A stretch of DNA of 64,000 nucleotides from Macrostomum lignano (lineage: Eukaryota). The position numbers were made by a program, and so were the translations under genes. Of the stretch, positions 10,662 to 57,250 are shown in pieces. Where the stretch lies: assembly GCA_002269645.1 (NCBI GenBank), contig NIVC01000143.1, positions 620,001 through 684,000 on the forward strand, in the 5' to 3' direction. Each line of letters begins with the position of its first letter. Position 1 is the first letter of the stretch. The notes beneath the pieces are model-generated. The model saw only the letters and a list, made by a program, of their open reading frames with translations, had not been told where the DNA came from and ran no database searches.

Positions 10662-12084
10662 TGCCACGTTTGCAGTTTAAACTGCTAGCTTATATTTGTC
10701 TTAAGTGTTTTCAGTTTTGTTGGTGCTTGCCCCAAATCCCAGATGCTCCATTGTATGCTCAGCCCCCCACCCCACCGTGTCCCAGTGAGTTGTCACCAAG
10801 CCGTGCCTATTGACTCTGTCACAAGCCCTAGCTAATGAACTCCATTTGAAGCCCTATTGCGCGTGACCAATTTTGAGTTTATTGATTTTTACTACAGCTG
10901 ATATATTTCTCTGTTTTTTGGGTAGAAACTAACTGACCACACTACTCAGAGCTCAGCTCCACAGTTTGTTTGTTGTCTTTTTTTGCTTGTTTGTTTTTTT
11001 CTATCTGTCTGTCTCTATGCTTATTTTATCATCTCGTGTTTTTCCTGTGCTCATCTGTGCTCACTTGTGCCAGTAAAAACTGTACAGACTGCGCGTTGAC
11101 ATTAATTAACTAATAAATTAATAAGAGAATTGCAGTGACAACAGGACAGGGTTAACGCACTTGAAATGAGAAGATATTAATGCTCAACCGGTCCTCGACC
11201 TTAGCAGTGCCAGTTGACAATATCATTAGCTTCCTTAATTGTTGACCGGTGTAAATTCCTGTGTTTTCGATACATATCGGCTAAGTAGATCCTATAATGA
11301 TGGCTAATTCTTTCTGATGTCTGTCAATCTTCTACTTGATCCCCTCTTTCTCAAATCCCAATTCTCAAAGTCCATCACTTATGCAACTAGAAATCGCAAG
11401 GTGAAAAAACGTGTGCTGTTTGTTTTTTAAATCGCTGCTAGAAAAACGCTTGTTATGCTACTTGTATCTTCAATAGTAATAGTAGTATAGTAGAACTCAA
11501 AAAATATGAATTTTGCGCTTCAAAATTATTTATTCAGCTTTTTTTCTAAAAGCCCAATTGGCTTTATCTGTTTTGTGTTTTTAAAATTAAAAATAACCTT
11601 TTGTCATTCTAAATAAAAGTTTCCTTTAGAACTGTTGTTTTGTTTTGTTTGTGCGTTAGTCTGCGTTTGCCGTGACTTTTTATATTATTTAGAAAGCTAA
11701 ACAAGAAGTTGTTAATTGTTAAATCAAAAACTTTTCTCTCCGAATTTCCATCTTGTCTACCCTCCCCTATTTCCCGCTTTTTTGCTGTTTGTTCGCGCAC
11801 TTCTCTGCTTTCCACTGCGTGCACTACCGCTTCTGAGCTCCACCTTGGGCCGATAGCCACTTTTGGACCCGACAATGTCAGTTCATCCTGACTCGAACCC
11901 CGGCACCCCACTGCTCTCTGCCTCTCTGTCTCTTGTTGATCTTGAACCTGGTTTCCTAATTTATCTGTAATAAGTATTTATAATATACCTATACATATTT
12001 ATATAATATGAATTGTGCTTCTGCCAGACTGCTTCAAAATTTTTTATGTGCAAAACACTGCTTTTTTATTTTCCATTTCCATTC

Positions 12085-13390
12085 CCAGATCCTCAGTTCC
12101 TGGGCCAGCCTCCCAGATCCTCAGTTCCTGGGCCAGCCTCCCAGATCCTCAGTTCCTGGGCCAGCCTCCCAGATCCTCAGTTCCTGGGCCAGCCTCCCAG
12201 ATCCTCAGTTGCTGGGTCAGCCTCCCAGATCCTCAGTTGCTGGACCAGCCTCCCAGATCCTCAGTTGCTGGGCCAGCCTCCCAGATCCTCAGTTGCTGGA
12301 CCAGCCTTTCAGATCCTCATCAGTTGCTAGGCCAGCCTCCCAGATCCTCAGTTGCTGGGCCAGCCTCCCAGATTTTCAGTTGCTGGGCCAGCCTCCCAGA
12401 TCCTCAGTTGCTGGGTCAGCCTCCCAGATCCTCAGTTGCTGGACCAGCCTTTCAGATCCTCATCAGTTGCTAGGCCAGCCTCCCAGATCCTCAGTTGCTG
12501 GGCCAGCCTCCCAGATCCTCATCAGTTGCTAGGCCAGCCTCCCAGATCCTCAGTTGCTTGGCCAGTCTCCCAGATTCTCAGTTGCTGGGCCAGCCTCCCA
12601 GATTCTCAGTTGCTGGGCCAGCCTTTCAGATCCTCATCAGTTGCTAGGCCAGCCTTCCAGATCCTCAGTTGCTGGGCCAGCCTCCTAGATCCTCAGTTGC
12701 TGGACCAGCCTTTCAGATCCTCATCAGTTGCTAGGCCAGCCTCTCAGATCCTCAGTTGCCTGGCCAGCCTCCCAGATCCTCATCAGTTGCTGGGCCAGCC
12801 TCCCAGATCCTCAGTTGCGGGACCAGCCTCCCAGATCCTCAGTTGTTGGGTCAGCCTCCCAGATCCTCAGTTGGTTGGCCAGCCTCCCAGATCCTCAGTT
12901 GCTAGGCCAGCCTCCCAGATCCTCAGTTGCTGGGCCACAGCCTCCCAGATCCTCATCAGTTGCCTGGCCAGCCTCCCAGATCCTCATCAGTTGCCTGGCC
13001 AGCCTCCCAGATCCTCATCAGTTGCCTGGCCAGCCTCCCAGATCCTCATCAGTTGCCTGGCCAGCCTCCCAGATCCTCATCAGTTGCCTGGCCAGCCTCC
13101 CAGATCCTCATCAGTTGCCTGGCCAGCCTCCCAGATCCTCATCAGTTGCCTGGCCAGCCTCCCAGATCCTCATCAGTTGCTTGGCCAGCCTCCCAGATCT
13201 TCATCAGTTGCCTGGCCAGCCTCCCAGATCCTCATCAGTTGCCTGGCCAGCCTCCCAGATCCTCATCAGTTGCCTGGCCAGCCTCCCAGATCCTCATCAG
13301 TTGCCTGGCCAGCCTCCCAGATCCTCATCAGTTGCCTGGCCAGCCTCCCAGATCCTCATCAGTTGCCTGGCCAGCCTCCCAGATCCTCAG
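12085..13390. repeat. Intergenic minisatellite, 28-bp unit changing to a 31-bp unit
   Basis: cccagatcctcagttgctgggccagcct at the left; cccagatcctcatcagttgcctggccagcct from about 12940. Confidence 0.97.
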
Positions 13391-13571
13391 TAGCTATGCT
13401 GCCCTCCCAGTTTCATAATTTTGGCATCGTAAAATTGATCAATAGAAAGCAAATAGCAAACAGATAGAAGTCAACTTGCACTACTCGTCAGTAGTGCTAC
13501 GCAATGTTCTCAACGCAAGCAACAATGAAACAAAGTTGCTTTATAGTCGCGCAAAGCACAATCTCAGCCCC

Positions 13572-13773: not shown

Positions 13774-28477
<14,704 letters not shown>

Positions 28478-31258: not shown

Positions 31259-34200
31259 TTAACTGCTGAAATATGAATTTTGCAATTGCATTATTAATGC
31301 ATTAGAATCTTGGCTGACTATCTGAGATAAATTTGATATTCTAGATTCACACAGGGGTTGGCAAACTCCGGCCCGCGGGACACATTCGGTCCGCAAAACC
31401 TTTCGAACCAGTCCTCAGGTCCTTTGGAACTTCATATCCGGTCAGCTCATGGTTTGTGTCTCTTCTCAGCTCTCTAATCTCCTATCTCTTTTCTCTTCTT
31501 CTCTTCTCTCCTCCCCTCTCCTTCTCTCTTCTCTTCTTTCTTCTCTCCCGTCTCCTCCCTCTCTTTTATTTTCTCTCTGCTCTCCTCTCTTCTCCTCTTT
31601 CCTCTCTCCTCCTCTCTTCCCTTCTGTCTCCTCTCCTCTATTTTCTTCCTTCTCTGCTCTCCTCTGCTCTTCTCTCTCCTTCTCTCTCCTCTCCTCTCTT
31701 CTCTTCTTCCCTCTCCTCTTCTCTCTCCTTCCTCCCCTCTCTCCTCCTCTTCCCTCTTCTCTTCTCCTCTCCTCTCTCCTCCCCTCTCCTCCTTCTCTTC
31801 TTCTCTCCTCCCTTCTCCTCGATGGGAAACAACTTTAATTACGTACCTGTTAAGCTCTCGGCGAAGCTCCTGCATCTTGTGAAACGACTCGGCGTGGTAC
31901 TGCATCTGAGCCTCGGTAAAGTCTTTCAGAGCGCGCAGATGATTGACCTAAAATATTTATTATACACAGTTTTAATTAATATTAAACACGACAGCATCAG
32001 CTAATGGTCATCCAATATAATAAAGACGACTCACATGAGCACCCTTGATGCCCTCAAGCAGCAGTCGGGTTACCTCAAGCTGCCGCTCGTACTGCTGCTG
32101 CTCCTTGGCGTAATCAGACTCCGACTGGGGAAGGAGAGACCGGACAAGAGGGGATAACAGCGTAACTTTGAATTCAAGAGCTGGAGAAACCGTACTTTTC
32201 AAAATTACAGATCCCATCTCCCCTTCAGGAACCTCCGATCCCATCTCTCCCCTTCAGGAACCTCAGATCCCATCGCTCCCCTTCAGGAGCCTCAGATCCC
32301 ATCTCCCCTTCAGGAACCTCAGATCCCATCGCTCCCCTTCAGGAACCTCCGATCCCATCTCTCCCCATCAAGAATCCCAGATCCCATCTCTCCCCTTCAG
32401 AAACCTCAGATCCCATCGCTCCCCTTCAGGAACCTCAGATCCCATCGCTCCCCTTCAGGAACCTCCGATCCCATCTCTCCCCATCAAGAATCCCAGATCC
32501 CATCTCTCCCCTTCAGAAACCTCAGATCCCATCGCTCCCCTTCAGGAACCTCCGATTCCATCGCTCCCCTTCAGGAACCTCAGATCCCATCGCTCCCCTT
32601 CAGGAACCTCCGATCCCATCGCTCCCCTTCAGGAACCTCCGATTCCATCTCTCCCCACCAAGAATCCCAGATGCCATCTCTCCCCATCAATAATCCCAGA
32701 TGCCATCTCTCCCCATCAATAATCCCAGATGCCATCTCTCCCCACCAAGAATCCCAGATGCCATCTCTCCCCATCAATAATCCCAGATGCCATCTCTCCC
32801 CATCAATAATCCCAGATGCCATCTCTCCCCATCAATAATCCCAGATTCCATCACTCCCGATCAATAATCCCAGATTCCATCGCTCCCCCAATAGAATCCC
32901 AGATCCCATCTCTTTTAACAGAATCCCAGATCCTATCTCTTTTAACAGAATCCCAGATCCCATCCCCCCAATAGAATCCTAGATCCCATCTTTCCCCCAA
33001 TAAAATCCCAGATCCCATTTCTCTCCCAAAATAATCCTAGATTCCGTCTCTCCGCCAATAGAATCCCAAATCCCATTTCTGTCCCAACAGAATCGCAGAT
33101 CCCATTTCTCCCCCAATAGAATCCCTGATCCCATCTCTTCCCCCAATAGAATCCCAGATCCCATCTCTCCCCCCAATAGAATCCCTGATCCCATCTCTTC
33201 CCCCAATAGAATCCCAGATCCCATCTCTTCCCCCAATAGAATCCCAGATCCTATCTCTCCCCCCAATAGAATCCCAGATCCCATCTCTCCCCCCAATAGA
33301 ATCCCTGATCCCATCTCTTCCCCCAATAGAATCCCAGATCCCATCTCTCCCCCCAATAGAATCCCAGATTCCGTCTCTCCTTTTGATGAATCCCAGATCC
33401 CGTCTCTCATTTTGATGAATCCCAGATCCCGTCTCTCCCTTTGATGAATCCCAGATCCCGTCTCTCATTTTGATGAATCCCAGATCCCGTCTCTCCCTTT
33501 GATGAATCCCAGATTCCATCTCTCTCAACAGAATTCCAGATCCCATCTCTCCCAATAGACTCCCAGATCCTATGTCTCTCCCTATCAAGAATTCCAGATA
33601 TCAATCTCCCCATCAAATCCCAGAACCAATTTATCTAGGTGTAAAAATGATAAGATTTCATTTCTGCAATGTAAATACATTTCACAACTCTAAAGGGCCA
33701 AGGGTCTAATACAGACAGCCAATTATCAATCAGATTTACAAAACCCACCACGGAGTCTGCGTCCCGACCCCTCTTGGCCCGAGCCTTAGCCGAGTCCAAG
33801 TCCAACCGCGCATTGTCCAACTCGCGCTTCTCCTTAGCGGCCGCTTTCACGTCGGTCTCCAGAAATTCTCTCAATGGTCGAAGAAACGACAGAGTAGACG
33901 TTTTAATAAAGTCCCTCTCCAGTACGGCTAGCTCCTTCTCTACCTGACCTACTCGGGCCAGGGCGCCGCCGTAGTCGGTGGTGGAGCCCAGCTCAGCGCC
34001 GGCCGTGGCCATCACGCAGCCGAGATCTTCCAACGGGCTTAGCCGGTCTCGTTTCTCCCGTTCGAATTTCTCGCACATGAGATCTTCGACGCGATGAGCG
34101 GGGTTGGGCTGCAGCACAGCTTCGGTGCTTTTAAGAATCCGCTCAGTCCACTGCTGGGTGGCGTCGGATACGCGGACCAGCTCCTCGAACTCGGGAGGGA

Positions 34201-37544: not shown

Positions 37545-37576
<32 letters not shown>

Positions 37577-38098
37577 CAACAACAAAATACGCTGTCAGGA
37601 TGGCAAAAGTCAGCGTCACAGGGCGCGCTTCATGGCTTGGGCGCGAACAAAGGCCGCGCCACCGGCAGTGTCCGGGGCGCCGGCGTCAGCCAGCAGACAG
37701 TCGATGTAACGCCGAGTTCGCGCTTGACCTCGCCGGTAGGGTGCCTGCAGCGTGAGCAGCAGCACCTCCTGCACCGGCTGTGGGCAGTACGACTCGGTGC
37801 GGATGAGATGGCCTGCGAGCTGGAGTCGCCGACGGCGCAGTAGATCGCTTGGACGTGGCAGGCCAGCGCGGCGATAAAGTGCCGCGTTGGTGACTCGCTC
37901 GACGCCGATGTTGAAGGCGGCGCGCAGCAGGCCAGCGTGCGCCGCATCGACTTGCTGTTCGAGTGAGTCCGTCAGCGTCCAGGTCTCGGCGTTGTACAGC
38001 AGGACGGTCTCGATTACCGCCTGGAACAGCGCCGCCCTCTTGCGGTCCGGTAGGGCCTCGGACTGCAGGACTGCCCTCACAGAACGAAAGGCTCACAG
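37545..38098 (-). mobile_element. 5'-truncated RTE-like non-LTR retrotransposon with (TTG)n tail and 11-bp TSD
   Basis: ORF 37616..38080(-) has LLYNAETWTLT and RRRRLQLAGHLIR (post-RT C-terminal region of RTE-type LINEs). (CAA)n at 37545-37585 is the 3' tail. aacgtttgaaa occurs at 37534-37544 and 38099-38109. Confidence 0.9.
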
Positions 38099-38979
38099 AA
38101 CGTTTGAAAAGATAATTTAAAATTTAGCTAAGCCTACGTGCGTTACCTAAATGATTTTTGCGTGTATTTACATTTTTGTGTAAGTTAAGAATATTTGGGA
38201 TATATTTGCATCAGGCGTCACTCTAGCTCAAGACCTGCAGATAAACTTTTACGTACGATTACAGCTCGAACAACATTTACATGGTTCGAGAATACACCTT
38301 GAAAGATAACTATTCCTAATCCAAAAGGGATGGATGTTTACTAGTAGCTCTTGTATGTATCCTTACTAGATGTGTTGGATTTCCATGCATCCTCCAAATA
38401 TTTGTACTTTCTGTATTGCAACACAGCCTCGTACTTTTCAGTTAGCAGACTCCCTAATAAGAGTTAAAAACGGAATTAAGGAGAATTAGAGAGCTCCGAC
38501 ATGACCAGAGCCCACTAGAAAAATGAGCGATCGGTGAGGGAGAGAATTAGCTAGTGCAAACAGACGCCAGCAAAAGCTGACAAGACGCGCCCCTGCCCCG
38601 CCCCCTATCATTTTAGCCAGCCAGAGCGACCTGGAAAAGAAATTAAAGCCAGAACTGGGTCAGAGGGCCCGAAAAAAGCCACGGATGAAAAGCAGGTCTG
38701 GACAAGCGAGAATTGCCTGATTGCAAGTTGCCATAGACAACTTGCAATCTGCGTGCAATGATGCTAAACTTGGAAGTAGCAATCGTTCTATGGTCGAAAT
38801 TGTCGCCTTAATTTACTCGTATGGTACAAAGCATCATGCGTGAGATACAGAAGTTTTTCTTTCATTATTTAAAAAAGCTGCACTTTCTCAGTCAGATCTA
38901 AGCTTTGAAACATCGAATCACTCGTACCCATTCTTTCTGTAACATACGAAACGAACTCATAACTTTCACAAAGTCGAAA

Positions 38980-41088
38980 ATGCGAGCCCGACTCCGCACG
39001 GTGACCGGTGCCGCCCAGGAGGTGGCTGGCATCACGAGAACCCACGGCTTGCTGCACATCTTCCTGTCCAGAGGCACAGCTCGACGGCTCTTCTGGCTGC
39101 TTCTGTTCGTAGCTGCCCTGATCGGCTGCACCGTCCACCTGGCCAAGTTGGTGCAGAAGTTCACCGAGCACTCCGTTGAGTCGCAGCTGAAGCTGAGGAG
39201 CGAACGAGCCCAGTTTCCCGACGTCACAATTTGCAACTTCAAGCCCGCTTCTGCTAGCTTAAAAAGGTTGAAGCTTTATCACGACTACCTGAATGAATCT
39301 TGGGGCAACTTCGACAACTGGTTCCAGGAGGACACCAAGAAGCGCCCTCATGAATCGGCTGAAAGCTACGAAAACCGACTTGAGAAGGTGTGTAAGAAGC
39401 TCCTGGACGTGATGTGGGTGTCGGGCGACACCAGAGACATCTCCCACCTCGATAAGACCATGCTGCTGAGCTGCCGCTACAACAGCGAGCCCTGCAGTCA
39501 CAAGAACTTCTCGCTTGTCCAGACCAGCCGGTTCTGGAGCTGCTACACGTTCCACCCGGACCCGGGGCAGTCGTCCAGCGGTTCTGGGGGCAGAGGAGCC
39601 GAGCTGAACATGGTGCTCTTCACCGATGGCTACACTGGGGCTTCTGTCCATTATAGTGAATTCTTACATTCCGATTCTGTGGGAGTCTGCAACAAGCGAC
39701 TAATTTTGGGTCAGGCTGCGACGAACACCTTGCTGGGAGGCAGTGATCCTCAGTCGACTGGACTGCGAGTTTTTATTCACGCGGCGAGCAGCTACCCCAT
39801 GAGCCGTACGTATCATTTCATTGAGGTCTTATCTGAGTTATATTCATTTGAGCATTTATGAAAAAATAGTTACAAGATCACGGACACATGAAAACCCCAT
39901 GCAAAACTGCAGAGACCGAGTTCGTGGACGTGGCCTCAGCCAGCAGCACCTCCATCAAACTCAGGCCGATCCACAACCGACTCAAGTCGACGCCGAGCCG
40001 CAGATGCTCCGAGCCTCCAATCGAAACCATCAACTATGTCAGGCACTTCTCCAACGCCTCGCTGAACGTGGTCACTAAGGCCTACTCAAAGTCCGTCTCC
40101 GATTTCGTAGTCGAGGCACAGCAGAGCATCCTGCACAGCAACTGCGGCTGCTACTCGCACCTGCTCCCGTTCTCGGTAAATACGAGCGACCTTTGCTACT
40201 TCGCTCCACCGCAGGAGTGGATCACCCCATCGGATGCTGTGCTGAAGAGAATTGACTGCCATGATCACTGGTTTCAGCACGCAAAGAGGAAAAGCGAGGA
40301 GCTAACGAAGGAATTCCAGCACCGGATGTGGTGCCAGTTCACTCAGCAACGGCCTTGGCAGCAGAGCCGCGGGTGGCCCCCGTTCAGCGCCGTTCAAGAG
40401 ATCTGGGAGAACCTGATGGTGCCGCAAGTGAGACATGGAGTCGAGTTCCTGCCCGAGGATGGCAAAGAGCATCACATATTCAGGAATATGAATCAATCTC
40501 GACAATTTTATCAATTTAATGTATTTCTTACGCAAGACGATAACTGCTTAAGCTTCTTCTGCAGAAATTCCTCTATAAAATATTACGAATGCAATTCTTC
40601 ACTGATGCTGCAGCATTTGGAGAATGCATCCTACTGCATCTATCAAAAAAGTTTGGCTCGCAGCCTGGCATCAGTCAGCATCAGCTTGCAGAGCCCGGCA
40701 GCTGACGTTTACGAAGAGAAGGCCGGCTACCACTGGACTGAAACTCTGTCCGAGGTGAGGCATTTCACACATTGGCCTTAGAAATGCGGAGAGTGTTGCC
40801 ACCTGTCAACATTCGAGTTGAAAAAGTTATTTTTGAATCCTGTTTTAGAATTTGATCAGGAACTTTTTTCAGCAGCATTTTCGGTTGGATTGAAGAATGT
40901 TCTCAAAGTTTTGCACGTTTGATTCATTATTCGATCGGTTTGAAATCCCGCAGGTCGGAGGAACTCTGGGGCTCTGGCTGGGAATCAGCGTTGTCAGCAC
41001 GTTCGAGCTGCTCGAGTTTTTCTACATCCTGGCTAAGCGCTGCCGCGGAGGAACGACCGGCTCCGAGTCCGAGGGGTCTCGAGACTGA
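38980..41088 (+). CDS. DEG/ENaC (amiloride-sensitive sodium channel family) subunit, about 600 aa; join(38980..39805,39913..40754,40954..41088)
   Basis: N-terminal THG motif, TM1 (RRLFWLLLFVAALIGC), FPDVTICN, LLSCRYNSEPC, GLRVFIH, Cys-rich loop, TM2 TLSE|VGGTLGLWLGISVVSTFE. Both introns are GT-AG and the total is a whole number of codons. A further intron inside 40430-40565 cannot be excluded. Confidence 0.92.
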
Positions 41089-42167
41089 CCGAGAATGATT
41101 GTGGAAGTACAATAAAACAACTGTAAAATGGTCAAGAAACTGCCAATGAGCATTGCCATTTGTTTGGTGCTTTTCATAGGGGAACCCAGTCGCTGTATTG
41201 TTTTTTTAAAATCTTATTTGCGAAAGTAAAAAAAGAATATTGAAGCTTCGATGTCTACTTGATGATTTGTTTTATTTTCAGTATTAGCTGTTTGAGTATA
41301 TATAATTTTGCTGGCCTTGTTTTTTTATTTGAAGCTGTAATCAAACCCAATCAAACTAAATTCAGCATTCATTGTTAACAAAAATAAGAAGAATGCTTTT
41401 CACTGGCAACTTAATTAGCTAATTGCTTTTAGTAGCACAATGCATTGCGAGATAAGAATTCCTTAATCACGAGCGCATTTACGTGCCCAAAGTTGATGCC
41501 AAAAATAGACAAGAAATAAAACAAAATTGTATGATGACGGAACAGAGAACCGATGGACACACTCGAGTATAGCTATACAGATTTAAGCCGTGCCTTTCTG
41601 GTTAAATAGTCGGGTCGCTTTCACGAGACCGAAACTACATTAGACCGAATTTCACATCGCAGAAAACTTATTATAGCAGGGACCATGCAGAATTTTTGAT
41701 TGTGTGAAACTTCGGTCTTATAAAGTACCCTGAAGTAGCCCGAGTGATCATTGCACTTTTCTTTCTCTTCAAGGCATACAGAAATTTGATAATGCAATAG
41801 TGCATTTCCAGTTGGCAGGTTTTTTCTTATTTTATTCGGGAATCCGGTTTCAAGTGCATGTTTTAAATTGAAAAAAGAGCTAGCTGTCCTCACTGTGGAT
41901 TCTCTAGCACTATAGTAAGTAGGTTTTAGCCATAGACGATTATTTCACAGATAGGTAAAGAGCCTACAGGGAGTTTTTTTAGCTCCCATTTGGCTTATTG
42001 TCATCATCTCTCCCGTTCCAGTCTGCTGGCCGCTTCGTGCCATAGACAAAATAAGTCCTTTACTGTCATGTCAAGACTAACCAAGTTTAAAAAGAAAGTA
42101 GCATATCGATTTAGCTCTTTTAGTTGAGTTTTGTTTAGATTATTTGAATATGTTGTTGAGTTGTGCT

Positions 42168-42482
42168 GGAGCTTCTTCGCCAGCTCCTGGCTTCGCGTCT
42201 CTCTGCGTGCTCAAACCAGGTGTCGTGGCAGCTGATTCTTTTCAGCACAACACCCGATGGTGTTATCCAGTCCTGCGGTGGTGCAAAGTAGCACAGTTCG
42301 CTCGTGTTCACTGAAAACCGGAGGAGGTGCGAGTAGCATGCAGTCTTAGTCCTTTGGCAGCAACATTCAATGAGGCGTTCAAGAAGTACCTGACGCAGCC
42401 TACAGTCTCTATTGGAGGTTTGGAGCACCGGTGTCGACATGAGCTTAAGCTGCTGGCCGATGCCACGTCCACGAATCTGTCT
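42168..42482 (-). pseudogene. Inverted, frameshifted fragment of the DEG/ENaC exon 2
   Basis: FVDVASAS, CSKPPIET, NASLNV and CYSHLL.FSVNTSELCYFAPPQDWITPS..VLKRI.CHD.WF.HA are split over two minus frames and match 39913-40330. Confidence 0.9.
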
Positions 42483-43269: not shown

Positions 43270-44222
<953 letters not shown>

Positions 44223-45225
44223 TTGTATCGGCATTCATCTAGTAAGAGTATGACACCAAATTTCTGTCTATAATATGTATATCAAGGCAGATCCAGGCGG
44301 TGCCACATTCAATCCGGCTTTTGTGCGCAGTAAACAGTGACCGAAGAGGTGCAAAAAGGGTCTACCCTCAAATAAAAAACGCCATTTTTCACCTTTGGTG
44401 GCGCCGATTTCAAATCCGACGAAGCAGGAATTTAGGGGTCAATTTATCGGAGCCCAAGAGGCATGATGAGTATATATAGTTCAGCCAGGTGCGCAGTGAC
44501 TGTGAAATTGGGCAGGTACCTGATCGCAGTTTTACACTCACCTCTGCTACGGAGTTTCCAAAGTTAGCTCCCCCCAGGCAATTTTGCCTTAAAATTGGAT
44601 ATGCCACCCATATAGATGGTAAACAATATTCCTGGGTCTGGTTTAGGTGGCATTTATTAATTCAAAGGTAAGTGCAGTGGAGTTAATAAACACACTTGAC
44701 TTGAGCTGAAGTGACTTTCTACACGTTGCTTATCTCTATTTATTCTAGCACAGAAAAGCATTAAAACGCAATATTTTATGATTATTTTTTCATAGACGCG
44801 TTCACTGATGAGCTGCTACCCCCTCCAGTTCCTGAGACCTTCCTATTAGTAGCAAAATTTAACTTAAAAACTCAATCCGTGGACGGAATTCAGAGAAACA
44901 AATGCAAGACAGACAGACTCCTGTTGAGCAGGGCCAAGCCAGTGCATGTGAGCTTAGTCCTGCCCTCAATAATTTATTTGTGTCGCATTACTTTTCTGAG
45001 CTGGGTTAGTTTTAAAACAGGAAACTCTCGTCAATTGTGGAGCCAGATAAGAATCTCAATGCTGAGTTGAGTTTACTTGCAGCTTTACAGCCGGCTCATA
45101 TAGATAAGGTACAGCTGTAAACTGCTCAAAATGCTGACTGTACATGTAATTCTGCAGATATTCCTTCAAGCCGGTTGTGGTTGATTTAAACAAATGTTTT
45201 ACTTACGTAGTACATCAATATTTTA

Positions 45226-45925
<700 letters not shown>

Positions 45926-46291: not shown

Positions 46292-48628
46292 TCAACGACT
46301 GGCCGCTTCGTCCCGCGTTCCGGTGAGCTGGTGAAACCGCTGCTCGTCCAGGCGCTGGCTTTTGTCCGACTGGCGAAGTCGGAGGAAAGCGGCGCCCCCC
46401 AGGAACTCGACCAGAGTTTTGCACAGGCCCAGCCTCGAAGCCGACCTGGCGACGTCATGCGGCTGCGGCACCAGCAGCAACTCGTGGGGCGGCCGGGCCA
46501 GCCTCACCTGCACGCTGAGCAGCTCCCAGTTGATGGTCCACGAGCAAATCTCTTCCAGTCGCCAAGCGCCAATCACCTGGCCTGTCGACGAATCCAGACG
46601 CATCAGCCGATTTGACGCCACGCCAATCAACTCGACTTTGCCAGCAGTTTTCTCTCGTTTGAAGTCACTGAAGCTCACCACTGCCGGCCTCTCTGGCTGC
46701 GGTCCTACCGTGCATTGGACCAGGAAGTGGGCCACTCCGTACATCGGCAAGCGTTGGCAGATGCGGATGTAGTCCAGTTTTGCGTCCAGCAAACCTCTGT
46801 CGCGCACGTTGTCCAACCGGATCAGAATCTGCTCGCGCAGCCAGCTCTGCTTTCGGGCTTTCAGATGACGCTGGGCCAAGAAGTTCTCCGGATCGAAATC
46901 GATTGAAGGCTGGCCGTTTCTTTCTCGACTTCGCTGCTGCGGCTTCGGAGTTTGCAGCTCCATCTGGGCCAGCGTGGCGGATAACTCAGCCTCGAAGGCC
47001 GACCTGCTAGCTAGAGTTTTGCCGCTAGCCACCAGGGTTATGCCCGCGATCCACTCGGCGTACTGATCTTTACCTTCGCAGCGTAGTAGGAGCTCCTGCA
47101 TCGGGGCATCCAGTTCTTGACTGCCGGCGTCGCTAACAAACAAGTGAATGCCGAACTTCTGAGTAGTTGTGCTCACGTTAGCGTTCACCTCGGCGCTTCT
47201 TAGATTAAAGACTTCTTCTAGACGATTCCTGGCCTGATCAGAGTACATTTCCAGCGTTGTCTCGCCCAGAACAAAGTACTTCCGACGGTAGCCGCGTAGA
47301 GTGCTCTTTCGGGGCTTTAAGAACTTCAGGTAGCCAGCTAGTTCGGGCATTTTGTCCAGACTCTGCTGCTGCTTCACCGGTTTAGACTTCTCCGGCTGTT
47401 CTTCAGGCACTGAGCTCAGTCTAGCGGGCGAAGCCAGGGTGAGAAAGTTGTCGGACATCAGCGAGGCTTCGAGTTCAGCGAGGGCGGCGTCGATTTCATC
47501 GTCATTGGAGCCGCTAGCATCGACACTTGGCGAAGCCTGTTTCGCTTTGCTGTCAGCTTCGTCCAGCAAGACGCTACCGCTTTTCGAAACGGGCGACTCG
47601 GCATGCGGCGATGCTGGCAGATCTGCCTGCAGGTAAATTTGAAGCTGAAGGGCAGCTAGAAGCAGGGCTTCTTCTTCGGTGCTCTCCAGTTCCTCAGATA
47701 GCAGCGACCATTTAGTCTGCTCGTAGATCTGGTTGATTCTCACCGAGTCGTACTTCACATTTAAATCGTAGAAGACGTGAAACTTGTAGCGCAACTGCAG
47801 CGAGTTGAGCTCGTTGGAGTTCGGCCGGACGCCCTGTTCCATCAGGGAGCGAGACGAGTCGAACCAGGCCTCGCTGGCAGCGGAAAGATTGGCCAGAGAT
47901 TTTGACCGAATGACGCCTTTTTCGAGCAGAGCAGTTTGCAGCGGTATCCAAGGACTGTTGGCCAAGCTTGCCAGCTCGTCTCTCTGGAACCGCAGAGAGT
48001 TGAACGATGTTGGCGAGGCTTCGGGCGGGCCCAGGGAGCTGGGTGTCCGCGGAGACGAGCTGGTCCGACTTGTTTCGCTGAACTGGCGCGGCATAAGCGG
48101 ATTAAAGTTGCCACTCCCGCTGCCGCCGTTCGACAGTTCCGGTTTGTCCGCCGACTTCCGGTTGGATCGTCGGAAGCTGCCGAATCGACTGCCGAGGGTG
48201 CCGTTGGATCCGGCAGAGCTTGCCATCAACAGATGCAGCGGACGCCGCAGCGACAGCTCTTCTGGGTGCCGGATGCCGAGCTCGCGGCACAGTCCGACTA
48301 CGACGCCGAACACTGATTGAGAATAGTTTATTGTCATCTCGAGCTCCTGGAGGTCGGGCAGCTGCACCTTGGTCACATTGTGCATCCGGTGGAACTCCAG
48401 TCTGGAATCCGACTGCACGCCGATTTGATCCAAAGTTCGACGCGTCTTCAGCAGCCAGCGATTTTCGTCTGGCCACCAGATCGCGTGGTCGGACCAGTCC
48501 ATGCGAACCTCGATACTCTCGATCAGCTTCAGCATGACGCCGCCGAGGTGCGTGTCGCCGCGGACTCGAATCCGCCGGTTTAGTTGCAGATCCTCGACAA
48601 GGATGCAGAGCTCCCAGCCTTCTTCCAT
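46292..48628 (-). CDS. FERMT: Kindlin / fermitin (UNC-112-like), single exon, 778 aa
   Basis: F0 (WELCILVE...GGVMLKL...DWSDHAIWW...WLLKT..TLDQ.GVQSD), F1 (LGIRHPEELSL), WFDSSRSLMEQGV, LRYKFH.FYDLN.KYD.VRINQIYEQ.KW, PH domain (PELAGYLKFLKPRKSTLRGY), F3 (ELIGVASNRLMRLD..TG). The ORF-track start 48634 is a TTG; the first ATG is 48628. Confidence 0.96.
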   Translation of the reverse strand: MEEGWELCILVEDLQLNRRIRVRGDTHLGGVMLKLIESIEVRMDWSDHAIWWPDENRWLLKTRRTLDQIGVQSDSRLEFHRMHNVTKVQLPDLQELEMTINYSQSVFGVVVGLCRELGIRHPEELSLRRPLHLLMASSAGSNGTLGSRFGSFRRSNRKSADKPELSNGGSGSGNFNPLMPRQFSETSRTSSSPRTPSSLGPPEASPTSFNSLRFQRDELASLANSPWIPLQTALLEKGVIRSKSLANLSAASEAWFDSSRSLMEQGVRPNSNELNSLQLRYKFHVFYDLNVKYDSVRINQIYEQTKWSLLSEELESTEEEALLLAALQLQIYLQADLPASPHAESPVSKSGSVLLDEADSKAKQASPSVDASGSNDDEIDAALAELEASLMSDNFLTLASPARLSSVPEEQPEKSKPVKQQQSLDKMPELAGYLKFLKPRKSTLRGYRRKYFVLGETTLEMYSDQARNRLEEVFNLRSAEVNANVSTTTQKFGIHLFVSDAGSQELDAPMQELLLRCEGKDQYAEWIAGITLVASGKTLASRSAFEAELSATLAQMELQTPKPQQRSRERNGQPSIDFDPENFLAQRHLKARKQSWLREQILIRLDNVRDRGLLDAKLDYIRICQRLPMYGVAHFLVQCTVGPQPERPAVVSFSDFKREKTAGKVELIGVASNRLMRLDSSTGQVIGAWRLEEICSWTINWELLSVQVRLARPPHELLLVPQPHDVARSASRLGLCKTLVEFLGGAAFLRLRQSDKSQRLDEQRFHQLTGTRDEAASR

Positions 48629-49368
48629 TGCCAATGGTGTAACAATAGTTCTTCCTTTGACTCAAGTTGAGAAGACCAGCGCTTTTATCAAACCTTAGAG
48701 TTTCATGCCAGTACGTGAGCTTATTATTGACGTTAAACGCGAGGTGCCTTTTGTATTAGAATTCCTTTAATGGCTTTATGCTAATAGCCACTCTGAGCAG
48801 TTGCCCTTCAACTCCGAGCAGACCTTTATATTGCGAAACAAAACAATGAATGGAGCAGCGCGTGGGCAGCTGACTGGTTTGCTAGCCAAATAAATACGAT
48901 TCTTCTGCCCTGGTACTAAAGCAAGACGAGTCTATTGCCACTCTCCTTTCTGCTCTCCCCGTCTATATCTGTTCTGTCGCAAAAGCTATTCACCTCCATT
49001 GCATTGCTGCCCAAAATGTGCGCTCTGCGGAGACCGCGGAGCGGCCCAAGTGCGCAGTGGAAACACAAACTAACCAATCCCAGAGGCTCTTGACACTTTT
49101 TTATCTCGCCCTGCCTGTCTGCTTCTCTCTTCTATGGTTTCCACTGGCCAGTGTGTCGGGTCTCTTATTAGTCTCGATATATTTGGCGTCAATCCCGAGT
49201 CACTTCATGGGCGGCTTGCGTTCGATTGTATAATTTTTGCAACGAATCTCTGAAAAGCAGCTCGTGTCGTAAAAAACGTGGCCAATATTTTTAACCCACA
49301 AAATGCGCTCGTAGATTTGCATGTATAAAAAAACTGTACCATCGATAAGTGATGATATACGCTCGTAC

Positions 49369-50538
49369 GGGTCGCCATCACAAGCTCGAAAAATCACATC
49401 GTCGAAACAGGGCTCCATCACAAGCTCGAAAAGTCATAAGCTCGAAAAGTCACATCGTCGAAAACTGATTTAGCAACCACCATCACAAGCTCGAAAACTC
49501 ACATCGTCGAAAAGTTTAGCAACCACCATCACAAGCTCGAAAAATCACATCGTCGAAACAGGGCTCCATCACAAGCTCGAAAAGCCATAAGCTCGAAAAG
49601 TCACATCGTCGAAAACTGATTTAGCAACCACCATCACAAGCTCGAAAACTCACATCGTCGAAAAGTTTAGCAACCACCATCACAAGCTCGAAAACTCACA
49701 AGCTCGAAAAATCACATCGTCGAAAACTGATTTAGCAGCCGACATCACAAGCTCGAAAAGTCATAAGCTCGAAAAATCATATCGTCCAAGAGTTTAGCAA
49801 CCACCATCACAAGCTCGAAAAGTCACAAGCTCGAAAAATCACATCGTTGAAAACTGATTTAGCAGCCACCATCACAAGCTCGAAAAGTCATAAGCTCGAA
49901 AAATCATATCGTCGAAAAGTTTATCAAACATCATCACAAGCTCGAAAAGGCACAAGCTCTAACCCTAACCCTAACCCCAAGGCACTAACCCTAACCCTAA
50001 GGCACCAGTACCCTAGCCTAACCCTGAACCATAACCCTAACCCCAACCCTAACCTAACCCTAAACCCTAACTTAAAGGCACTAGTTCTAACCCCGACCCT
50101 AACCATAAACCCTAACCCTAAGGCACAAGTTCAACCCCAACCCTAAACTTAACCCTAAGCCCTAACCCTAAGGCACAAGCTCTAAACCCTAACCCTATTC
50201 AAGCTTGTGATGGTGGTTGCTAACCTTTTCGACGAGGTGATTTTTCGAGCTTATGACTTTTGGAGCTTGTGATGGTGGCTGCTAAATCAGTTTTCGACGA
50301 TGTGAGTTTTCGAGCTTGTGAGTTTTCGAGCTTGTGAGTTTTCGAGCTTGTGATGGTGGTTGCTAAATCAGTTTTCGACGATGTGAGTTTTCGAGCTTGT
50401 GAGTTTTCGAGCTTGTAATGGTGGTTGCTAAACTTTTCGACGATATGATTTTTCGAGCTTATGACTTTTCGAGCTTGTGATGGTGGCTGCTAAATCAGTT
50501 TTCAACGATGTGATTTTTCGAGCTTGTGATGGGCCCCC
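49369..50538. mobile_element. Foldback-type element with modular inverted arms and a telomeric-repeat core
   Basis: Left arm 49369-49958 of cacaagctcgaaaa / cacatcgtcgaaaa / gatttagcaaccaccat modules; right arm 50201-50538 of the reverse-complement modules; ends gggtcgccatcac / gtgatgggccccc; direct repeat gctcgtac at 49361-49368 and 50539-50546 (9 bp if the preceding c is counted). Confidence 0.88.
49959..50196 (-). repeat. Degenerate interstitial telomeric repeat (CCCTAA)n
   Basis: About 16 exact CCCTAA hexamers counted by eye, plus variants. Confidence 0.9.
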
Positions 50539-52405
50539 GCTCGTACAAGCTACTAATACGCTATTATACTATCTTGAAATTAAACAGAATTGCTCTGCTA
50601 TTAACTATACTCTCTACTTAGAGTAGAAATACAACAGAGAACGTTAAATAAAAAAAATCTTTAGGGAGTTCGAATAATTGCTATGTGGAACAATGGACAC
50701 TGGAAAACAATGGAAATTGACTCCGATTTTGTGTCCATGTGTCGGTGTTCAGATCCTTCTGCACTTAATTTGCTGTAATATCATTTTTTACAAATCAAAT
50801 ATTTTGTATTTTTCAGTCACGAGGTCAATCTGCAACTCTCCAATTTAACATGGTGCAAAAGCATTGTATAATATGCAGACATGCCTGGTTTGGTACCTTG
50901 ACAGGAAAATCACGATGTTGGGGTGCCAGCTCGTCAGGCCCGCGTGGTGGCACTCCGTTGAAGGTCCCGAAGGTCGCTTGTATGTCTACAGGTCAACCTG
51001 GAGGGTCGCCATCGTCCATTTCATTCGCCGATTATGTCTACTGACTGAATGCTGCATGCAGAAGAGGATTCTTTCATTTCAGTTTTGGAAACGCATGAGC
51101 CATCTCTGAGATGCCGATCGGGTGCTTTTTTGAAGGTCCTGACGGTCGCCGCCGATGCTCCAGACGGTGATGAAGGGGACCCTGGTGCCTGGGATGCTGA
51201 GAAAAAAGGCCTCTACGACTGATATGCATAGTTTGTTGAGCCGACGTGGTTTTATGATAGATTTTATCAGCAGAAAAAATTTGCCAATGTTGGTGGTTTT
51301 TTTCTCCGGACACCCCGAGAAGAATCGTTGAATATCTGGACGATGCCGATTTTTCGTGATTCTTAAAGTTGCTCTATCGAATAGAGCGGAAAATTTTAGC
51401 CCGTGTTCTGGATTTTCATGGCAATTGGTTGAACATTCTTGGAGATCCAGGCACAGGAAAAATGTGTGTATTTGAAATACACCCCCAGGGTCTTTCTACT
51501 GTAAACTGATAGAAAATGAAAGCGTCTTGTTGTCTCTGTGAAAACCTCAAACCGTTCTTTCTATTCTGGCTCATCGTTTCATATTGTATTCGATTTGTGC
51601 AGTGTTTGCATATTTCAAACGCTTGGCCAATAGAACTCCAATGGACCGTTCCCTTTTGCATGCAACAACCAAGGACGACTTAAGTAGAATGGACGGGAAA
51701 CCTCGTTTCTGCCTAAATTTTAGAAGGCAAGTTTTTCCGAAACAGGACACAGCTCTAATTCCTGGTTTTATGAATCTATTTTATCATCTCTCTTACAAAT
51801 ATTTGCTACACAGTCAGCTAAGAATGATAAAATAGACACAAAACCAAAGAGCCGAGCCGTGCCATTTCAATGTTTTTTAGGCACAAGACACGTGCAAATG
51901 TACGTAGAATAAAAAATCCACATAGACTCTAATTTTTTGAACGGAGAGCTTTATGAACATCGATAGAGCACTAAGAAAGGCACACCATATCAAAAAATGA
52001 AACACTGGATCTGCCTCCTATCAAAAGCAATAACAATTTTTGTGCTGAAAAAATGAAAACTTCCTATCTCCGTAGTGTATTTTTTCGGGAAAACCTAGCT
52101 GCCTTTTAAAATTTTCAAAGAAACCAGGTTTCCCCTCCTTCTACTTTAAGTCGTCCTTGGCCACGACACATACATGTATAGCGCGACAAAATTTATAATA
52201 AAATCGGCAAGATTCTGTTAACAATAAAATACCTACAGTATAACTATTAATAGCTTTTAGTATCCTATACTTTTGAAAGCTTTAGTCTGTGTCATAATCC
52301 GTCTAAAATTGTGTCTAAATCTACTAAAAACTGACTGACGAACTCGTTAAAAGATATTCATTCTCAGCTTCATCAAGTTATAACTCAACAGTCGCACAAA
52401 CCACA

Positions 52406-52834
52406 ATGAAGCAGCAGCAGCAGCAGAAAAAAAGCCCAAAAGATGAGGCAGACCGGACTCTCGATCTGGTCTGCCTGCTCGACGCCCACCTACGAGCTAG
52501 CGGTCTGAAACGAGAGGTGAGCCGGTACATAGTCAGTGAGCTGAACAACTGCTCAGAGCTGAAGGCGCGGATTCACGAGCAGACCAAGCTGCGCATGCAG
52601 ATGCTGGACGTTGAGTCAGACTCAGTAGCCGAGAGGAACCACCTGGTGCGAGATATCTTTGAGGCTGTGCGGCCCCTGGTGCCCGATAGAATTCAGCTGC
52701 ACGCGGCCGAGATGGTGAAGCCGGCGGCGACCGAGCTGCTGAAGAAGCGGAGGCTGGGAGCCGAAACTGGGCTGCAACGCGTCATCGATCAGAGGCTGAG
52801 TTCGACAAGGAGCAATTCGTTCCCTGAATTTTGA
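52406..52834 (+). CDS. Hypothetical helical protein, 142 aa, single exon
   Basis: ATG-started ORF with the GC3-rich codon usage of neighbouring genes, standing out from AT-rich flanks; acceptor-like ttctcag 39 nt upstream. No family recognised. Confidence 0.65.
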   Translation: MKQQQQQKKSPKDEADRTLDLVCLLDAHLRASGLKREVSRYIVSELNNCSELKARIHEQTKLRMQMLDVESDSVAERNHLVRDIFEAVRPLVPDRIQLHAAEMVKPAATELLKKRRLGAETGLQRVIDQRLSSTRSNSFPEF

Positions 52835-56224: not shown

Positions 56225-57250
56225 ACCGAAGTTGAAATCACAGAATATACACAGAATGCCGATTCGAGAATTTTTGTTTAAAAAATCGGTGCAAGAATTG
56301 AAATCACACCAGCCTACTCTTGTGAAGCGTTGTTGTGAAGCGTTGATAAGTAGGGCTTGAGTTTTTGCCATAGACTATTCCAAGAGCGATTTTTATTCTT
56401 TGCTTTCAAATGAAAATTAGGTTCAGTCTGAGCCAAGGACAACTTGATAACTCAGGACCGGAAACGAGCCAATTCAAGGCGAAAAAAGTATGAGGCTCGT
56501 TTAAAAGCATTGTTCTATGGCCCATCCGTATGCGCATGCTTTCAGTTGCCAATGTATACTCGTATCATATTTGACTTTTTGATAGGCAGTCAGAAGGCGG
56601 GTGCAGGGTCGGTTTTCTTAAATGTTGAATAGTTTTATTATCTTTCACTTTCTGTTTGTGGGATGGTTGTCACACACAAGCGCTACATGTTGATTGACGA
56701 GTTGAATGCACACGCCCATGTAGTCTGTCACGGTCTAAACAACAACAAAATTGTTAATGAATTCATGTGGCCAGGCTAAATCTGATTCACAAAGCACATT
56801 TGAAGAAATTCTTACCGTCAGTTGATTAGGCAGAGACAGTCGCCAAGCCTCTCGTTCAGTTGCATCTTTAGGAAATGAAAATACTGCAACATTCCGATCA
56901 CGGTTACTATTGTAGTTTGCACAACAGAAAATGACGCTGCATTTTCTCGGCATGATATTTAGTTTCAGCAAGAATAAAAGTTCTCTCTCTCAATTGCAAG
57001 TGCATGCGAAGAACTCAATTTTCAGCTCAGATTTCTTCGCTTTCGTAGCACACGGATGGGCCATAGAACAATGCTTTTAAACGAGCCTCATACTTTTTTC
57101 GCCATGAATTGGCTCGTTTCCGGTCCTGAGTTATTAAGTTGTCCTTGGTCTGAGCTAAGTTCAGGCAGTAGTGCACACGAATTTTAATTCGGCTTCATGG
57201 AAATCGCTCGATTTGGCATTCTGTGTATATTCTGTGGTTGAAGTGGTTAT
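56225..57250. mobile_element. Non-autonomous foldback element with nested inverted repeats and an internal decayed THAP exon
   Basis: Inner arms 56433-56532 / 57048-57147 (about 100 bp, few mismatches); outer arms 56235-56268 / 57203-57240 (cacagaatatacacagaatgcc). Confidence 0.8.
56735..56953 (-). pseudogene. Decayed THAP zinc-finger fragment
   Basis: MPRKCSVIFC...VFSFPKD..ER.AW...P...VLCESD retains the THAP C-C, FP and W landmarks; the CxxH histidine is replaced by D and the AVP motif is absent. Confidence 0.7.

What the first reader, a model, noticed from the sequence alone, without database searches (positions are those of the whole stretch)
49361..50546. Foldback transposon carrying a telomeric-repeat core
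Seen: a 1170-bp unit bounded by an 8-9 bp direct repeat, with GGG...CCC ends, unequal inverted arms (about 590 and 340 bp) built from shuffled short modules, and a 240-bp core of degenerate CCCTAA. The core is interleaved with the arm module (aaggcacaagctct), so the hexamers look like part of the element rather than a healed chromosome end. Established: TTAGGG is the ancestral animal telomere repeat; modular arms with 8-9 bp TSDs occur in FB/MULE-type foldbacks. Inference: a mobile vehicle spreading interstitial telomeric sequence that may recruit telomere-binding proteins; it sits about 740 bp upstream of the kindlin ATG.
Basis: partly seen in the sequence, partly recalled or inferred. Interest (0 to 1): 0.8.

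Follow-up and report, generated by a model that had tools for sequence, protein, structure and literature searches.

The report
Old foldback transposon with telomere-repeat loop
A 1.17-kb hairpin-shaped, non-coding DNA transposon relic sits upstream of a kindlin gene in the flatworm Macrostomum lignano. Its loop is made of telomere-type repeats, but nothing I could test shows that it is a family spreading such repeats around the genome.

Summary
The window comes from Macrostomum lignano (assembly Mlig_3_7). At 49369-50537 lies a 1169-bp unit flanked by an exact 9-bp direct repeat (CGCTCGTAC). It has GGG...CCC termini and inverted arms of 590 and 340 bp built from about 40 copies of a 16-bp module. 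A 239-bp core of one-orientation CCCTAA repeats is interrupted six times by a truncated arm module. As single-stranded DNA it folds into a ~340-bp stem with the telomeric core as the loop.

This matches the structural definition of Foldback / Mutator-Phantom-type non-autonomous DNA transposons such as FB, Tm1 and Tetris.

All three homeologous kindlin loci in the assembly carry the element at the same site, with an identical core. Two other nearby insertions do show clean empty sites in the homeologs. The foldback insertion is therefore older than the subgenome split, and no empty-site allele exists in this assembly.

I found no second copy in about 130 kb of unique M. lignano DNA, in predicted proteins or in the metagenome collection. 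No searchable flatworm DNA collection was available, so copy number, an autonomous partner and whether the telomeric core is shared by a family all remain untested.

Verdict: an ordinary kind of element with an unusual loop. The claim that it is a vehicle spreading interstitial telomeric sequence is unsupported but not refuted.

The parts
49360..49368 (.). Left copy of the 9-bp target-site duplication, CGCTCGTAC
   Evidence: Exact match to 50538-50546. It abuts the first base of the left terminus and is present in homeologs L002 and L003.
49369..49407 (+). Left terminal inverted repeat, GGGTCGCCATCACAAGCTCGAAAAATCACATCGTCGAAA
   Evidence: Aligns with the reverse complement of the right terminus with one indel and two mismatches.
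49369..49958 (+). Left arm (590 bp): 16-bp modules CAYAWSSTCGAAA+NNN with 17-20 bp spacers. Includes a 151-bp higher-order unit present 2.2 times (49375-49700).
   Evidence: One 151-bp unit is absent from both homeologs, so arm length changes by whole units.
49959..50197 (+). Middle domain, the loop of the hairpin: degenerate (CCCTAA)n in one orientation, interrupted by GGCAC(AAGCTC) arm-module fragments. Higher-order period is about 45-50 bp.
   Evidence: It is unpaired in the predicted fold and 100% identical in all three homeologs.
50198..50537 (-). Right arm (340 bp): the same modules in inverted orientation
   Evidence: The homeologs differ here by an 8-bp indel and 3 SNPs.
50500..50537 (-). 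Right terminal inverted repeat (reverse complement GGGGCCCATCACAAGCTCGAAAAATCACATCGTTGAAA)
50538..50546 (.). Right copy of the 9-bp target-site duplication, CGCTCGTAC
   Evidence: In L003 it carries one SNP (CGCTCTTAC).
46292..48628 (-). Context only: intronless kindlin/fermitin-family CDS (778 aa) whose ATG lies 740 bp from the element

Best explanation
This is a fossil insertion of a non-autonomous foldback-type cut-and-paste DNA transposon. The superfamily is most likely Mutator/Phantom-Foldback.

Shown: a transposase-style staggered cut duplicated 9 bp of target, CGCTCGTAC. The element has ~38-bp terminal inverted repeats starting GGG, followed by arms made of dozens of copies of a 16-bp subrepeat. 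It has no coding capacity. It was already in place, with its present core, before the three M. lignano subgenomes (S, L1, L2) diverged. Since then only the arms have changed, by gain or loss of a 151-bp repeat unit and small mutations.

Inferred: the element was mobilised in trans by a transposase that binds the termini and the reiterated 16-bp modules. It is now probably immobile.

Inferred: the telomere-like loop is a secondary product rather than a function. The centre of a long palindrome is a preferred breakage site. One break there was extended by telomerase; on the minus strand the inner end of the right arm, ...CACAAGCTTGAA, is followed directly by TAGGGTTAGGG. The extended end was rejoined to the other arm inside a 16-bp module. 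The junction-containing unit (telomeric run plus AGCTTGTGCC) was then tandemly duplicated to give the 45-50 bp higher-order repeat. Whether this happened before the element last moved or after it landed here cannot be told from one insertion.

My sub-probabilities: transposon insertion about 0.8; Mutator/Phantom-type given that, about 0.55; telomerase-repair origin of the core about 0.5.
For: - The 9-bp flanking repeat is exact and is the only one at that spacing in the window.
- The terminal inverted repeat and the module anatomy are defined.
- The fold gives a ~340-bp stem with the whole core as loop, dG -320 kcal/mol against -90 +/- 5 for shuffles, z = -42.
- The arms and core account for all 1169 bp, and no protein family or predicted protein matches the arm translations.
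- Published definitions match. [quoted passage not shown] MULEs have 8-10 bp TSDs and subterminal tandem repeats (PMC5225508).
- Age: all three homeologous loci are filled at the same site with the same TSD. A P-like element and a LINE fragment in the same 22 kb are absent from the homeologs with clean empty sites, so the comparison can detect post-split insertions.
- Core: all hexamers point one way. Every unit has the same GTGCC|TT(A/G/T)... junction, which indicates duplication of a single junction. TRF finds a 45-50 bp period.
- (TTAGGG)n is the M. lignano telomere repeat by FISH (PMC5068713).
- Telomerase-mediated insertion of telomeric repeats at double-strand breaks is an established origin of short interstitial telomeric sequences (PMC8537989 abstract; PMC6410037).
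Against: - No second copy, no copy with a different TSD, no empty site and no autonomous partner were found, so transposition rests on structure alone.
- The arms are only about 92% complementary. Tm1 arms average 93%, so this is not unusual.
- The superfamily cannot be assigned without a transposase. Merlin also has GG termini and 8-9 bp TSDs.
- The telomerase-repair history is a reconstruction from junction sequences and has not been demonstrated. Capture of a pre-existing telomeric tract as cargo would give the same end state.
Confidence: 0.7

Rival explanations
1. One reading: the element belongs to a multi-copy foldback family whose middle domain is intrinsically a telomeric array. Transposition then disperses interstitial telomeric sequence, which may bind telomere proteins, around the genome.
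For: - The hexamers are interleaved with arm-module fragments, so the array has co-evolved with the element rather than being a bare healed end.
- The core sits exactly where foldback and MULE elements carry cargo.
- It is the only telomeric run in about 130 kb of unique sequence surveyed, so its position at the element's centre is not a coincidence of abundant interstitial telomeric sequences.
- Transposon-mediated spread of telomeric repeats has been proposed in general terms (PMC6410037).
Against: - Only one insertion is known, and it is shared by the three homeologs.
- No other copy was found in any reachable data.
- (TTAGGG)n FISH in M. lignano shows signal only at chromosome ends (PMC5068713). 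A few hundred dispersed 240-bp tracts would probably escape FISH, however.
- The interleaving is equally well explained by local tandem duplication of one junction.
Confidence: 0.2
2. Not a transposon: a local palindrome made by fold-back replication or inverted duplication of a minisatellite, or by a break-fusion event, with telomere repeats marking a healed or fused end.
For: - The genome is extremely rich in minisatellites: 13% tandem repeats (PMC5730564 supplement), with dozens of arrays in this window.
- No second copy was found.
Against: - Such mechanisms do not predict an exact 9-bp direct duplication of flanking DNA abutting GGG...CCC inverted termini.
- A telomere-telomere fusion would give head-to-head TTAGGG/CCCTAA, but all 16 exact hexamers point one way.
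- The arm module occurs nowhere else in the window as a free minisatellite.
Confidence: 0.08
3. A transposon, but of another superfamily, either Merlin or a P/Galileo-like foldback, rather than Mutator/Phantom.
For: - Merlin has conserved 5'-GG termini, TIRs up to 462 bp and 8-9 bp TSDs, and occurs in flatworms (PMC8101967).
- A P-superfamily element has been recently active in this same locus.
- Galileo shows that foldback architecture can evolve in the P superfamily (PMC3573991 abstract).
Against: - Foldback architecture with short tandem subrepeats and a 9-bp TSD is most often Mutator-related.
- The P-like neighbour makes an 8-bp TSD and has unrelated termini.
- The 590-bp left arm exceeds the TIR range reported for Merlin.
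Confidence: 0.15
4. An exapted regulatory element: the hairpin or G-rich loop is retained because it affects kindlin or the divergent 166-aa gene, for example as a source of hairpin RNA, a G-quadruplex or a boundary.
For: - It is retained in all three subgenomes with a 100% identical 239-bp core.
- It lies in the 3.7-kb divergent intergenic region between kindlin and the 166-aa ORF.
Against: - Zero differences in 239 bp is not significant when the flanks differ by only about 1%; about 2 differences are expected.
- The arms tolerate a 151-bp unit change and an 8-bp indel.
- There is no Rfam match and no expression data.
Confidence: 0.05

Closest known systems
Tm1 Mutator/Foldback family of root-knot nematodes (PMC3169594)
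   Same: 9-bp TSD. Composite TIRs of variable, unequal length made of ~14-bp tandem repeats behind short, slightly asymmetric end motifs. MITE-like members of about 1 kb with a non-coding middle. Arms about 93% identical.
   Different: The sequences are unrelated. The Tm1 middle domain carries a histone-hairpin motif or a transposase, not telomeric repeats. Tm1 was shown to be multi-copy with different TSDs, and its Phantom-like transposase was found. Neither has been shown here.
Drosophila Foldback (FB) and Tetris (PMC4079207)
   Same: Long internally repetitive inverted arms, a variable middle domain, 8-10 bp TSDs, and arm repeats that gain and lose units.
   Different: Insect elements with unrelated sequence and larger arm repeats in Tetris (220 bp). 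No telomeric loop has been described. That FB itself makes a 9-bp TSD is from my own knowledge.
Galileo (P-superfamily foldback-like element, PMC3573991)
   Same: Foldback-like long TIRs with internal tandem repeats.
   Different: Galileo belongs to the P superfamily, whose TSDs are shorter (7 bp for Galileo, from my own knowledge). The element here has 9 bp.
Merlin superfamily (PMC8101967)
   Same: Terminal 5'-GG, 8-9 bp TSDs, occurrence in flatworms.
   Different: Merlin is not typically a foldback with modular subrepeat arms. No IS1595-type transposase is linked to this element.
Short interstitial telomeric sequences inserted by telomerase during double-strand-break repair (Nergadze et al.; PMC8537989, PMC6410037)
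   Same: A short, one-orientation, degenerate telomeric tract at an internal site. The junction is compatible with extension of a broken 3' end.
   Different: Here the tract lies at the centre of a transposon palindrome and has been amplified together with a piece of the arm into a higher-order repeat. Classical short ITSs are simple and not interleaved.
Ciliate transposons with telomeric repeats (Tetrahymena Tel-1, Oxytricha TBE1; from my own knowledge, not checked here)
   Same: Telomeric repeats physically associated with inverted-repeat transposons.
   Different: There the telomeric repeats sit at the outer termini of the element, not in the loop. The organisms and the repeat sequences also differ.

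Membership tests
Foldback-type non-autonomous DNA transposon (Mutator/Phantom-Foldback) | Target-site duplication of 8-10 bp, typically 9 bp | tested here: met
   Exact 9-bp CGCTCGTAC on both sides, and the only such repeat at this spacing in the window. Criterion.
Foldback-type non-autonomous DNA transposon (Mutator/Phantom-Foldback) | Long composite terminal inverted repeats built from short tandem subrepeats, of variable and often unequal length | tested here: met
   Arms of 590 and 340 bp made of 16-bp modules. The left arm differs by one 151-bp unit between homeologs.
Foldback-type non-autonomous DNA transposon (Mutator/Phantom-Foldback) | Single strand folds back into a long hairpin with a non-coding middle domain as the loop | tested here: met
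   dG -320 kcal/mol, z = -42, and the loop is the 239-bp core. No ORF with any homolog.
Foldback-type non-autonomous DNA transposon (Mutator/Phantom-Foldback) | Several dispersed copies with the same termini and different TSDs and flanks | tested here: inconclusive
   None found in the window, about 67 kb of other M. lignano loci, predicted proteins or the metagenome, prokaryote and viral collections. The M. lignano genome itself could not be searched.
Foldback-type non-autonomous DNA transposon (Mutator/Phantom-Foldback) | Insertion polymorphism (an empty site) | tested here: not met
   All three homeologous loci are filled. The same comparison does reveal empty sites for two neighbouring insertions. 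This shows age, not absence of mobility.
Foldback-type non-autonomous DNA transposon (Mutator/Phantom-Foldback) | Autonomous partner encoding a Mutator/Phantom DDE transposase with the same termini | not testable with these tools
   No transposase in the window or the fetched loci, and no way to search the flatworm genome.
Merlin superfamily | Terminal 5'-GG and an 8-9 bp TSD | tested here: met
   Termini GGGTCG and GGGGCC, with a 9-bp TSD. Criterion.
Merlin superfamily | IS1595-type DDE transposase in autonomous members | not testable with these tools
   No partner could be sought.
P superfamily / Galileo-type foldback | 7-8 bp TSD | tested here: not met
   The TSD is exactly 9 bp because the flanking bases differ. 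The genuine P-like neighbour has an 8-bp TSD and unrelated termini.
Interstitial telomeric sequence from telomere-telomere fusion | Head-to-head (TTAGGG)n(CCCTAA)n | tested here: not met
   16 exact CCCTAA and 0 TTAGGG on the + strand.
Short interstitial telomeric sequence from telomerase-mediated break repair | One-orientation telomeric tract starting at a non-telomeric 3' end, and absent from the orthologous site of relatives | tested here: inconclusive
   Orientation and the junction ...CACAAGCTTGAA|TAGGGTTAGGG fit. But the tract is identical in all three homeologs, and no outgroup species was reachable.

The most novel reading that the evidence does not exclude
The element is one member of a still-undescribed flatworm foldback family whose loop is always a telomeric array. 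Transposition would then scatter telomerase- and telomere-protein-recognisable tracts next to genes. These tracts would be a ready source of chromosome-healing seeds and fragile sites in a genome known for karyotype instability.
Probability: 0.15. Interest if true: 0.65.

Novelty: new member of a known kind. Interest (0 to 1): 0.3.

Why it matters
If it is just an old foldback relic, it adds a structurally clean foldback-type element from a free-living flatworm. It is also a tidy example of telomeric repeats lodged at a palindrome centre, which is consistent with hairpin tips being break-and-heal sites.

It would matter more if other copies carry the same core. That would be direct evidence for the long-suggested but poorly documented idea that transposons disperse interstitial telomeric sequences. 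It would be relevant to M. lignano, a neopolyploid with unstable karyotypes.

The three-subgenome comparison used here is a practical way to date insertions in this species: shared insertions predate the split and private ones follow it.

Tried and rejected
1. Empty-site test. I fetched the two other homeologous kindlin loci. Both are filled.
2. Other copies via predicted proteins. Arm-only six-frame translations from both strands, searched against 5.8 billion proteins, gave 0 hits.
3. JGI metagenome scan with the arm 18-mer. It returned 31 isolated single hits, none extending beyond 28 bp, which is chance level.
4. Two-module pattern in the prokaryote genome and viral collections. 0 hits in each.
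5. Extra M. lignano DNA via the kindlin paralogs P0002 and P0003. No arm, core or telomeric run was found.
6. Genome sampling through a LINE RT-tail ORF. This returned only 0.5-3 kb metagenome contigs and was useless for sampling.
7. Rfam and tRNA scans of the window. Nothing found.
8. Literature. I found no described foldback with a telomeric middle domain and no M. lignano DNA-transposon superfamily breakdown.

Rejected readings:
- Telomere-fusion scar, because the orientation is wrong.
- P/Galileo-type element, because the TSD length is wrong.
- Chance flanking repeat.
- Significance of the 100% conserved core, because it is not significant against flanks that differ by only about 1%.
Full report
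**Source and context.** The kindlin-like ORF of the window was found by exact look-up on contig NIVC01000143.1 of assembly GCA_002269645.1. Several papers identify this assembly as Macrostomum lignano Mlig_3_7, and the close protein hits are named M. lignano. The ORF (46292-48628, minus strand, 778 aa, no introns) has Kindlin_2_N, FERM_M and PH domains. The finding lies in the 3.7-kb intergenic region between this gene and a divergently oriented 166-aa ORF (52328-52834, plus strand). The wider window holds BAR-domain, ASC-channel, hnRNP-Q/RRM and glycosyltransferase genes and dozens of minisatellite arrays. This fits the published 13% tandem-repeat content of the genome.

**Check of the observation.**
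- The unit is 49369-50537 (1169 bp).
- It is flanked by the exact 9-mer CGCTCGTAC at 49360-49368 and 50538-50546. The neighbouring bases differ, so the repeat is exactly 9 bp.
- At this spacing it is the only 9-mer direct repeat among 62,813 positions in the window.
- The termini read GGGTCGCCATCACAAGCTCGAAAAATCACATCGTCGAAA and, for the reverse complement of the right end, GGGGCCCATCACAAGCTCGAAAAATCACATCGTTGAAA. This is a ~38-nt terminal inverted repeat with one indel and two mismatches.
- The arms are 590 and 340 bp. Their best ungapped inverted pairing is 223 nt at 92%.
- The arms consist of a 16-bp module (CAYAWSSTCGAAA plus three bases; 26 and 13 strict matches) separated by a 17-20 bp spacer, (AC)TGATTTAGCARCCACCAT.
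- The left arm contains a 151-bp higher-order unit 2.2 times at 98-99% identity.
- The 18-mer CCATCACAAGCTCGAAAA occurs 22 times, all inside the element and in opposite orientation in the two arms, against 0.06 expected.
- The core (49959-50197, 239 bp) has 16 exact CCCTAA and no TTAGGG on the plus strand, and 67% of its bases lie in exact telomeric 6-mers. Telomeric 12-mers occur nowhere else in the window.
- The core is interrupted six times by GGCAC, three times extended to GGCACAAG(C/T)T(C). This is the arm module CACAAGCTC truncated. TRF sees a 45-50 bp higher-order period.
- As single-stranded DNA, 49600-50537 folds into one long stem with the entire core as an unpaired loop. The energy is -320 kcal/mol against -90 +/- 5 for shuffles, z = -42.

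**Is there an empty site?** M. lignano is a neopolyploid with three subgenomes (S, L1, L2) that differ by roughly 1.4-2.4% in SNPs (PMC10733133). The kindlin protein cluster has three genomic members in the assembly. I fetched the other two loci with 10-kb flanks.

Both carry the element at the same position with the same flanking 9-mer; the right copy in L003 has one SNP. Their copies are 1010 bp. They lack one 151-bp left-arm unit and differ by an 8-bp indel and three SNPs in the right arm and one SNP in the left arm. The 239-bp core is identical in all three. The flanks are about 99% identical.

This negative result is informative, because the same comparison does reveal private insertions. 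A 716-bp TIR element with a THAP ORF (56433-57148) and a LINE fragment (about 37545-38099) are present only in the window's copy. The homeologs show clean empty sites with a single copy of the duplicated target.

So the foldback insertion, already with its present core, predates the subgenome split. The most parsimonious reading of the 151-bp difference is a recent unit duplication in the window's lineage, because the two units are 99% identical.

**Are there other copies?** I could not search the flatworm genome directly, because none of the DNA collections holds it. Indirect routes gave nothing.
- No arm module or telomeric run in the rest of the window.
- None in about 67 kb around two other M. 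lignano kindlin paralogs.
- No predicted protein reading through an arm among 5.8 billion.
- Only chance-level isolated 18-mer hits in JGI metagenomes.
- Nothing in prokaryote genomes or viral contigs.
- An attempt to sample the genome through a multi-copy LINE ORF returned only sub-3-kb metagenome contigs.

Copy number, family membership of the core and the autonomous partner therefore remain open. About 130 kb of unique sequence cannot exclude a family of hundreds or even a few thousand copies in a 764-Mb assembly.

**What it is.** The anatomy matches the published structural definition of foldback-type elements.
[quoted passage not shown] It has short asymmetric end motifs followed by 13-15 bp tandem repeats, MITE-like members of about 1 kb, arms about 93% identical, and a Phantom/Mutator-type transposase (PMC3169594).
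- MULEs have 8-10 bp TSDs and subterminal tandem repeats thought to be transposase-binding sites (PMC5225508; PMC4079207).

I therefore read the unit as a non-autonomous foldback transposon that was mobilised in trans, most likely by a Mutator/Phantom-type enzyme. Merlin (GG termini, 8-9 bp TSD, present in flatworms; PMC8101967) is not excluded. A P/Galileo-type element is unlikely because the TSD is exactly 9 bp, and the genuine P-like neighbour makes 8 bp with unrelated termini.

**The telomeric loop.** (TTAGGG)n is the M. lignano telomere repeat by FISH, and no interstitial clusters were seen at cytological resolution (PMC5068713). The core is not a telomere-fusion scar, because all hexamers point one way.

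Read on the minus strand, the inner end of the right arm (...CACAAGCTTGAA) is followed directly by TAGGGTTAGGG.... Each telomeric run then ends in (G)AGCTTGTGCC, followed again by TTAGGG. The last GAGCTTGTGCC continues as the normal arm module (TTTTCGAGC...).

Because all six interruptions share the same junction, they are tandem copies of one original junction rather than independent events. The simplest history has three steps, all inferred rather than shown:
1. One break at the palindrome centre.
2. Telomerase extension of one end and rejoining to the other arm. This is the established route to short interstitial telomeric sequences (PMC8537989; PMC6410037).
3. Unequal exchange or slippage that amplified the junction unit.

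Capture of a telomeric tract as cargo would leave the same result. Whether the event preceded the last transposition cannot be told from a single insertion.

**Function.** Nothing suggests a function. The perfectly conserved core is not statistically remarkable against flanks that differ by only about 1%. The arms tolerate unit gain or loss and indels, and there is no Rfam match. Effects on kindlin expression or recruitment of telomere proteins were not testable.

**Verdict.** It is a new member of a known kind with an unusual middle domain, and of modest interest unless a genome-wide search shows a family sharing the telomeric core.

Noticed in passing
window 56425-57156: A 716-bp TIR element (56433-57148; 101-nt TIRs at 97%; termini CAAGGACAACTTG...) with an 8-bp TSD, GTCTGAGC, and an internal minus-strand THAP-domain ORF (56735-56971; Pfam E = 2e-5). 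It looks like an internally deleted P-superfamily transposon. It is absent from both homeologous loci, which show a clean empty site, so it inserted after the subgenome split and its family was recently active. It lies about 270 bp upstream of the glycosyltransferase ORF.
   Followed up: yes
window ~37545-38099: A non-LTR retrotransposon fragment (RT C-terminal tail ORF, 37619-38092, minus strand) flanked by an ACGTTTGAAA-type direct repeat. It is absent from both homeologs, which show an empty site. Its closest protein relatives (60-88% identity) are on short JGI and ENA metagenome contigs, so Macrostomum-like DNA is present in some public metagenomes.
   Followed up: partly
window 40149-40288 and 42199-42338: A 140-nt inverted repeat at 82% complementarity, 1.9 kb apart. 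One arm lies inside the ASC (amiloride-sensitive channel) gene, so this looks like an inverted partial duplicate of genic sequence rather than a transposon.
   Followed up: no
L003 ~16654-17126 versus window 40606-41578: One homeolog (NIVC01000038.1) has a replaced or shortened segment at the 3' end of the ASC channel gene, and no ASC gene is called there. This is a possible homeolog-specific gene loss.
   Followed up: no
window, throughout (e.g. 18968-19725, 12083-13395, 32208-33624, 43270-44223, 45226-45925): An extraordinary density of minisatellites and microsatellites. Examples are a 77-bp unit x 9.8 at 99% identity, a 28-bp unit x 45, an 87-bp unit x 16, and long (CTGT)n and (CTAT)n-type arrays in both orientations. 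Several of these create long spurious ORFs.
   Followed up: no
window 46292-48628; L035-L037: The kindlin gene is intronless and present in three ~99% identical homeologous copies. At least two further diverged kindlin paralogs exist (47% identity over the full length for one; for the other, 69% over only 16% of the query), also as single-exon ORFs.
   Followed up: partly
window 49307-49314: The 8-mer CGCTCGTA, which is 8 of the 9 TSD bases, also occurs about 50 bp upstream of the left TSD. This is probably coincidence.
   Followed up: no
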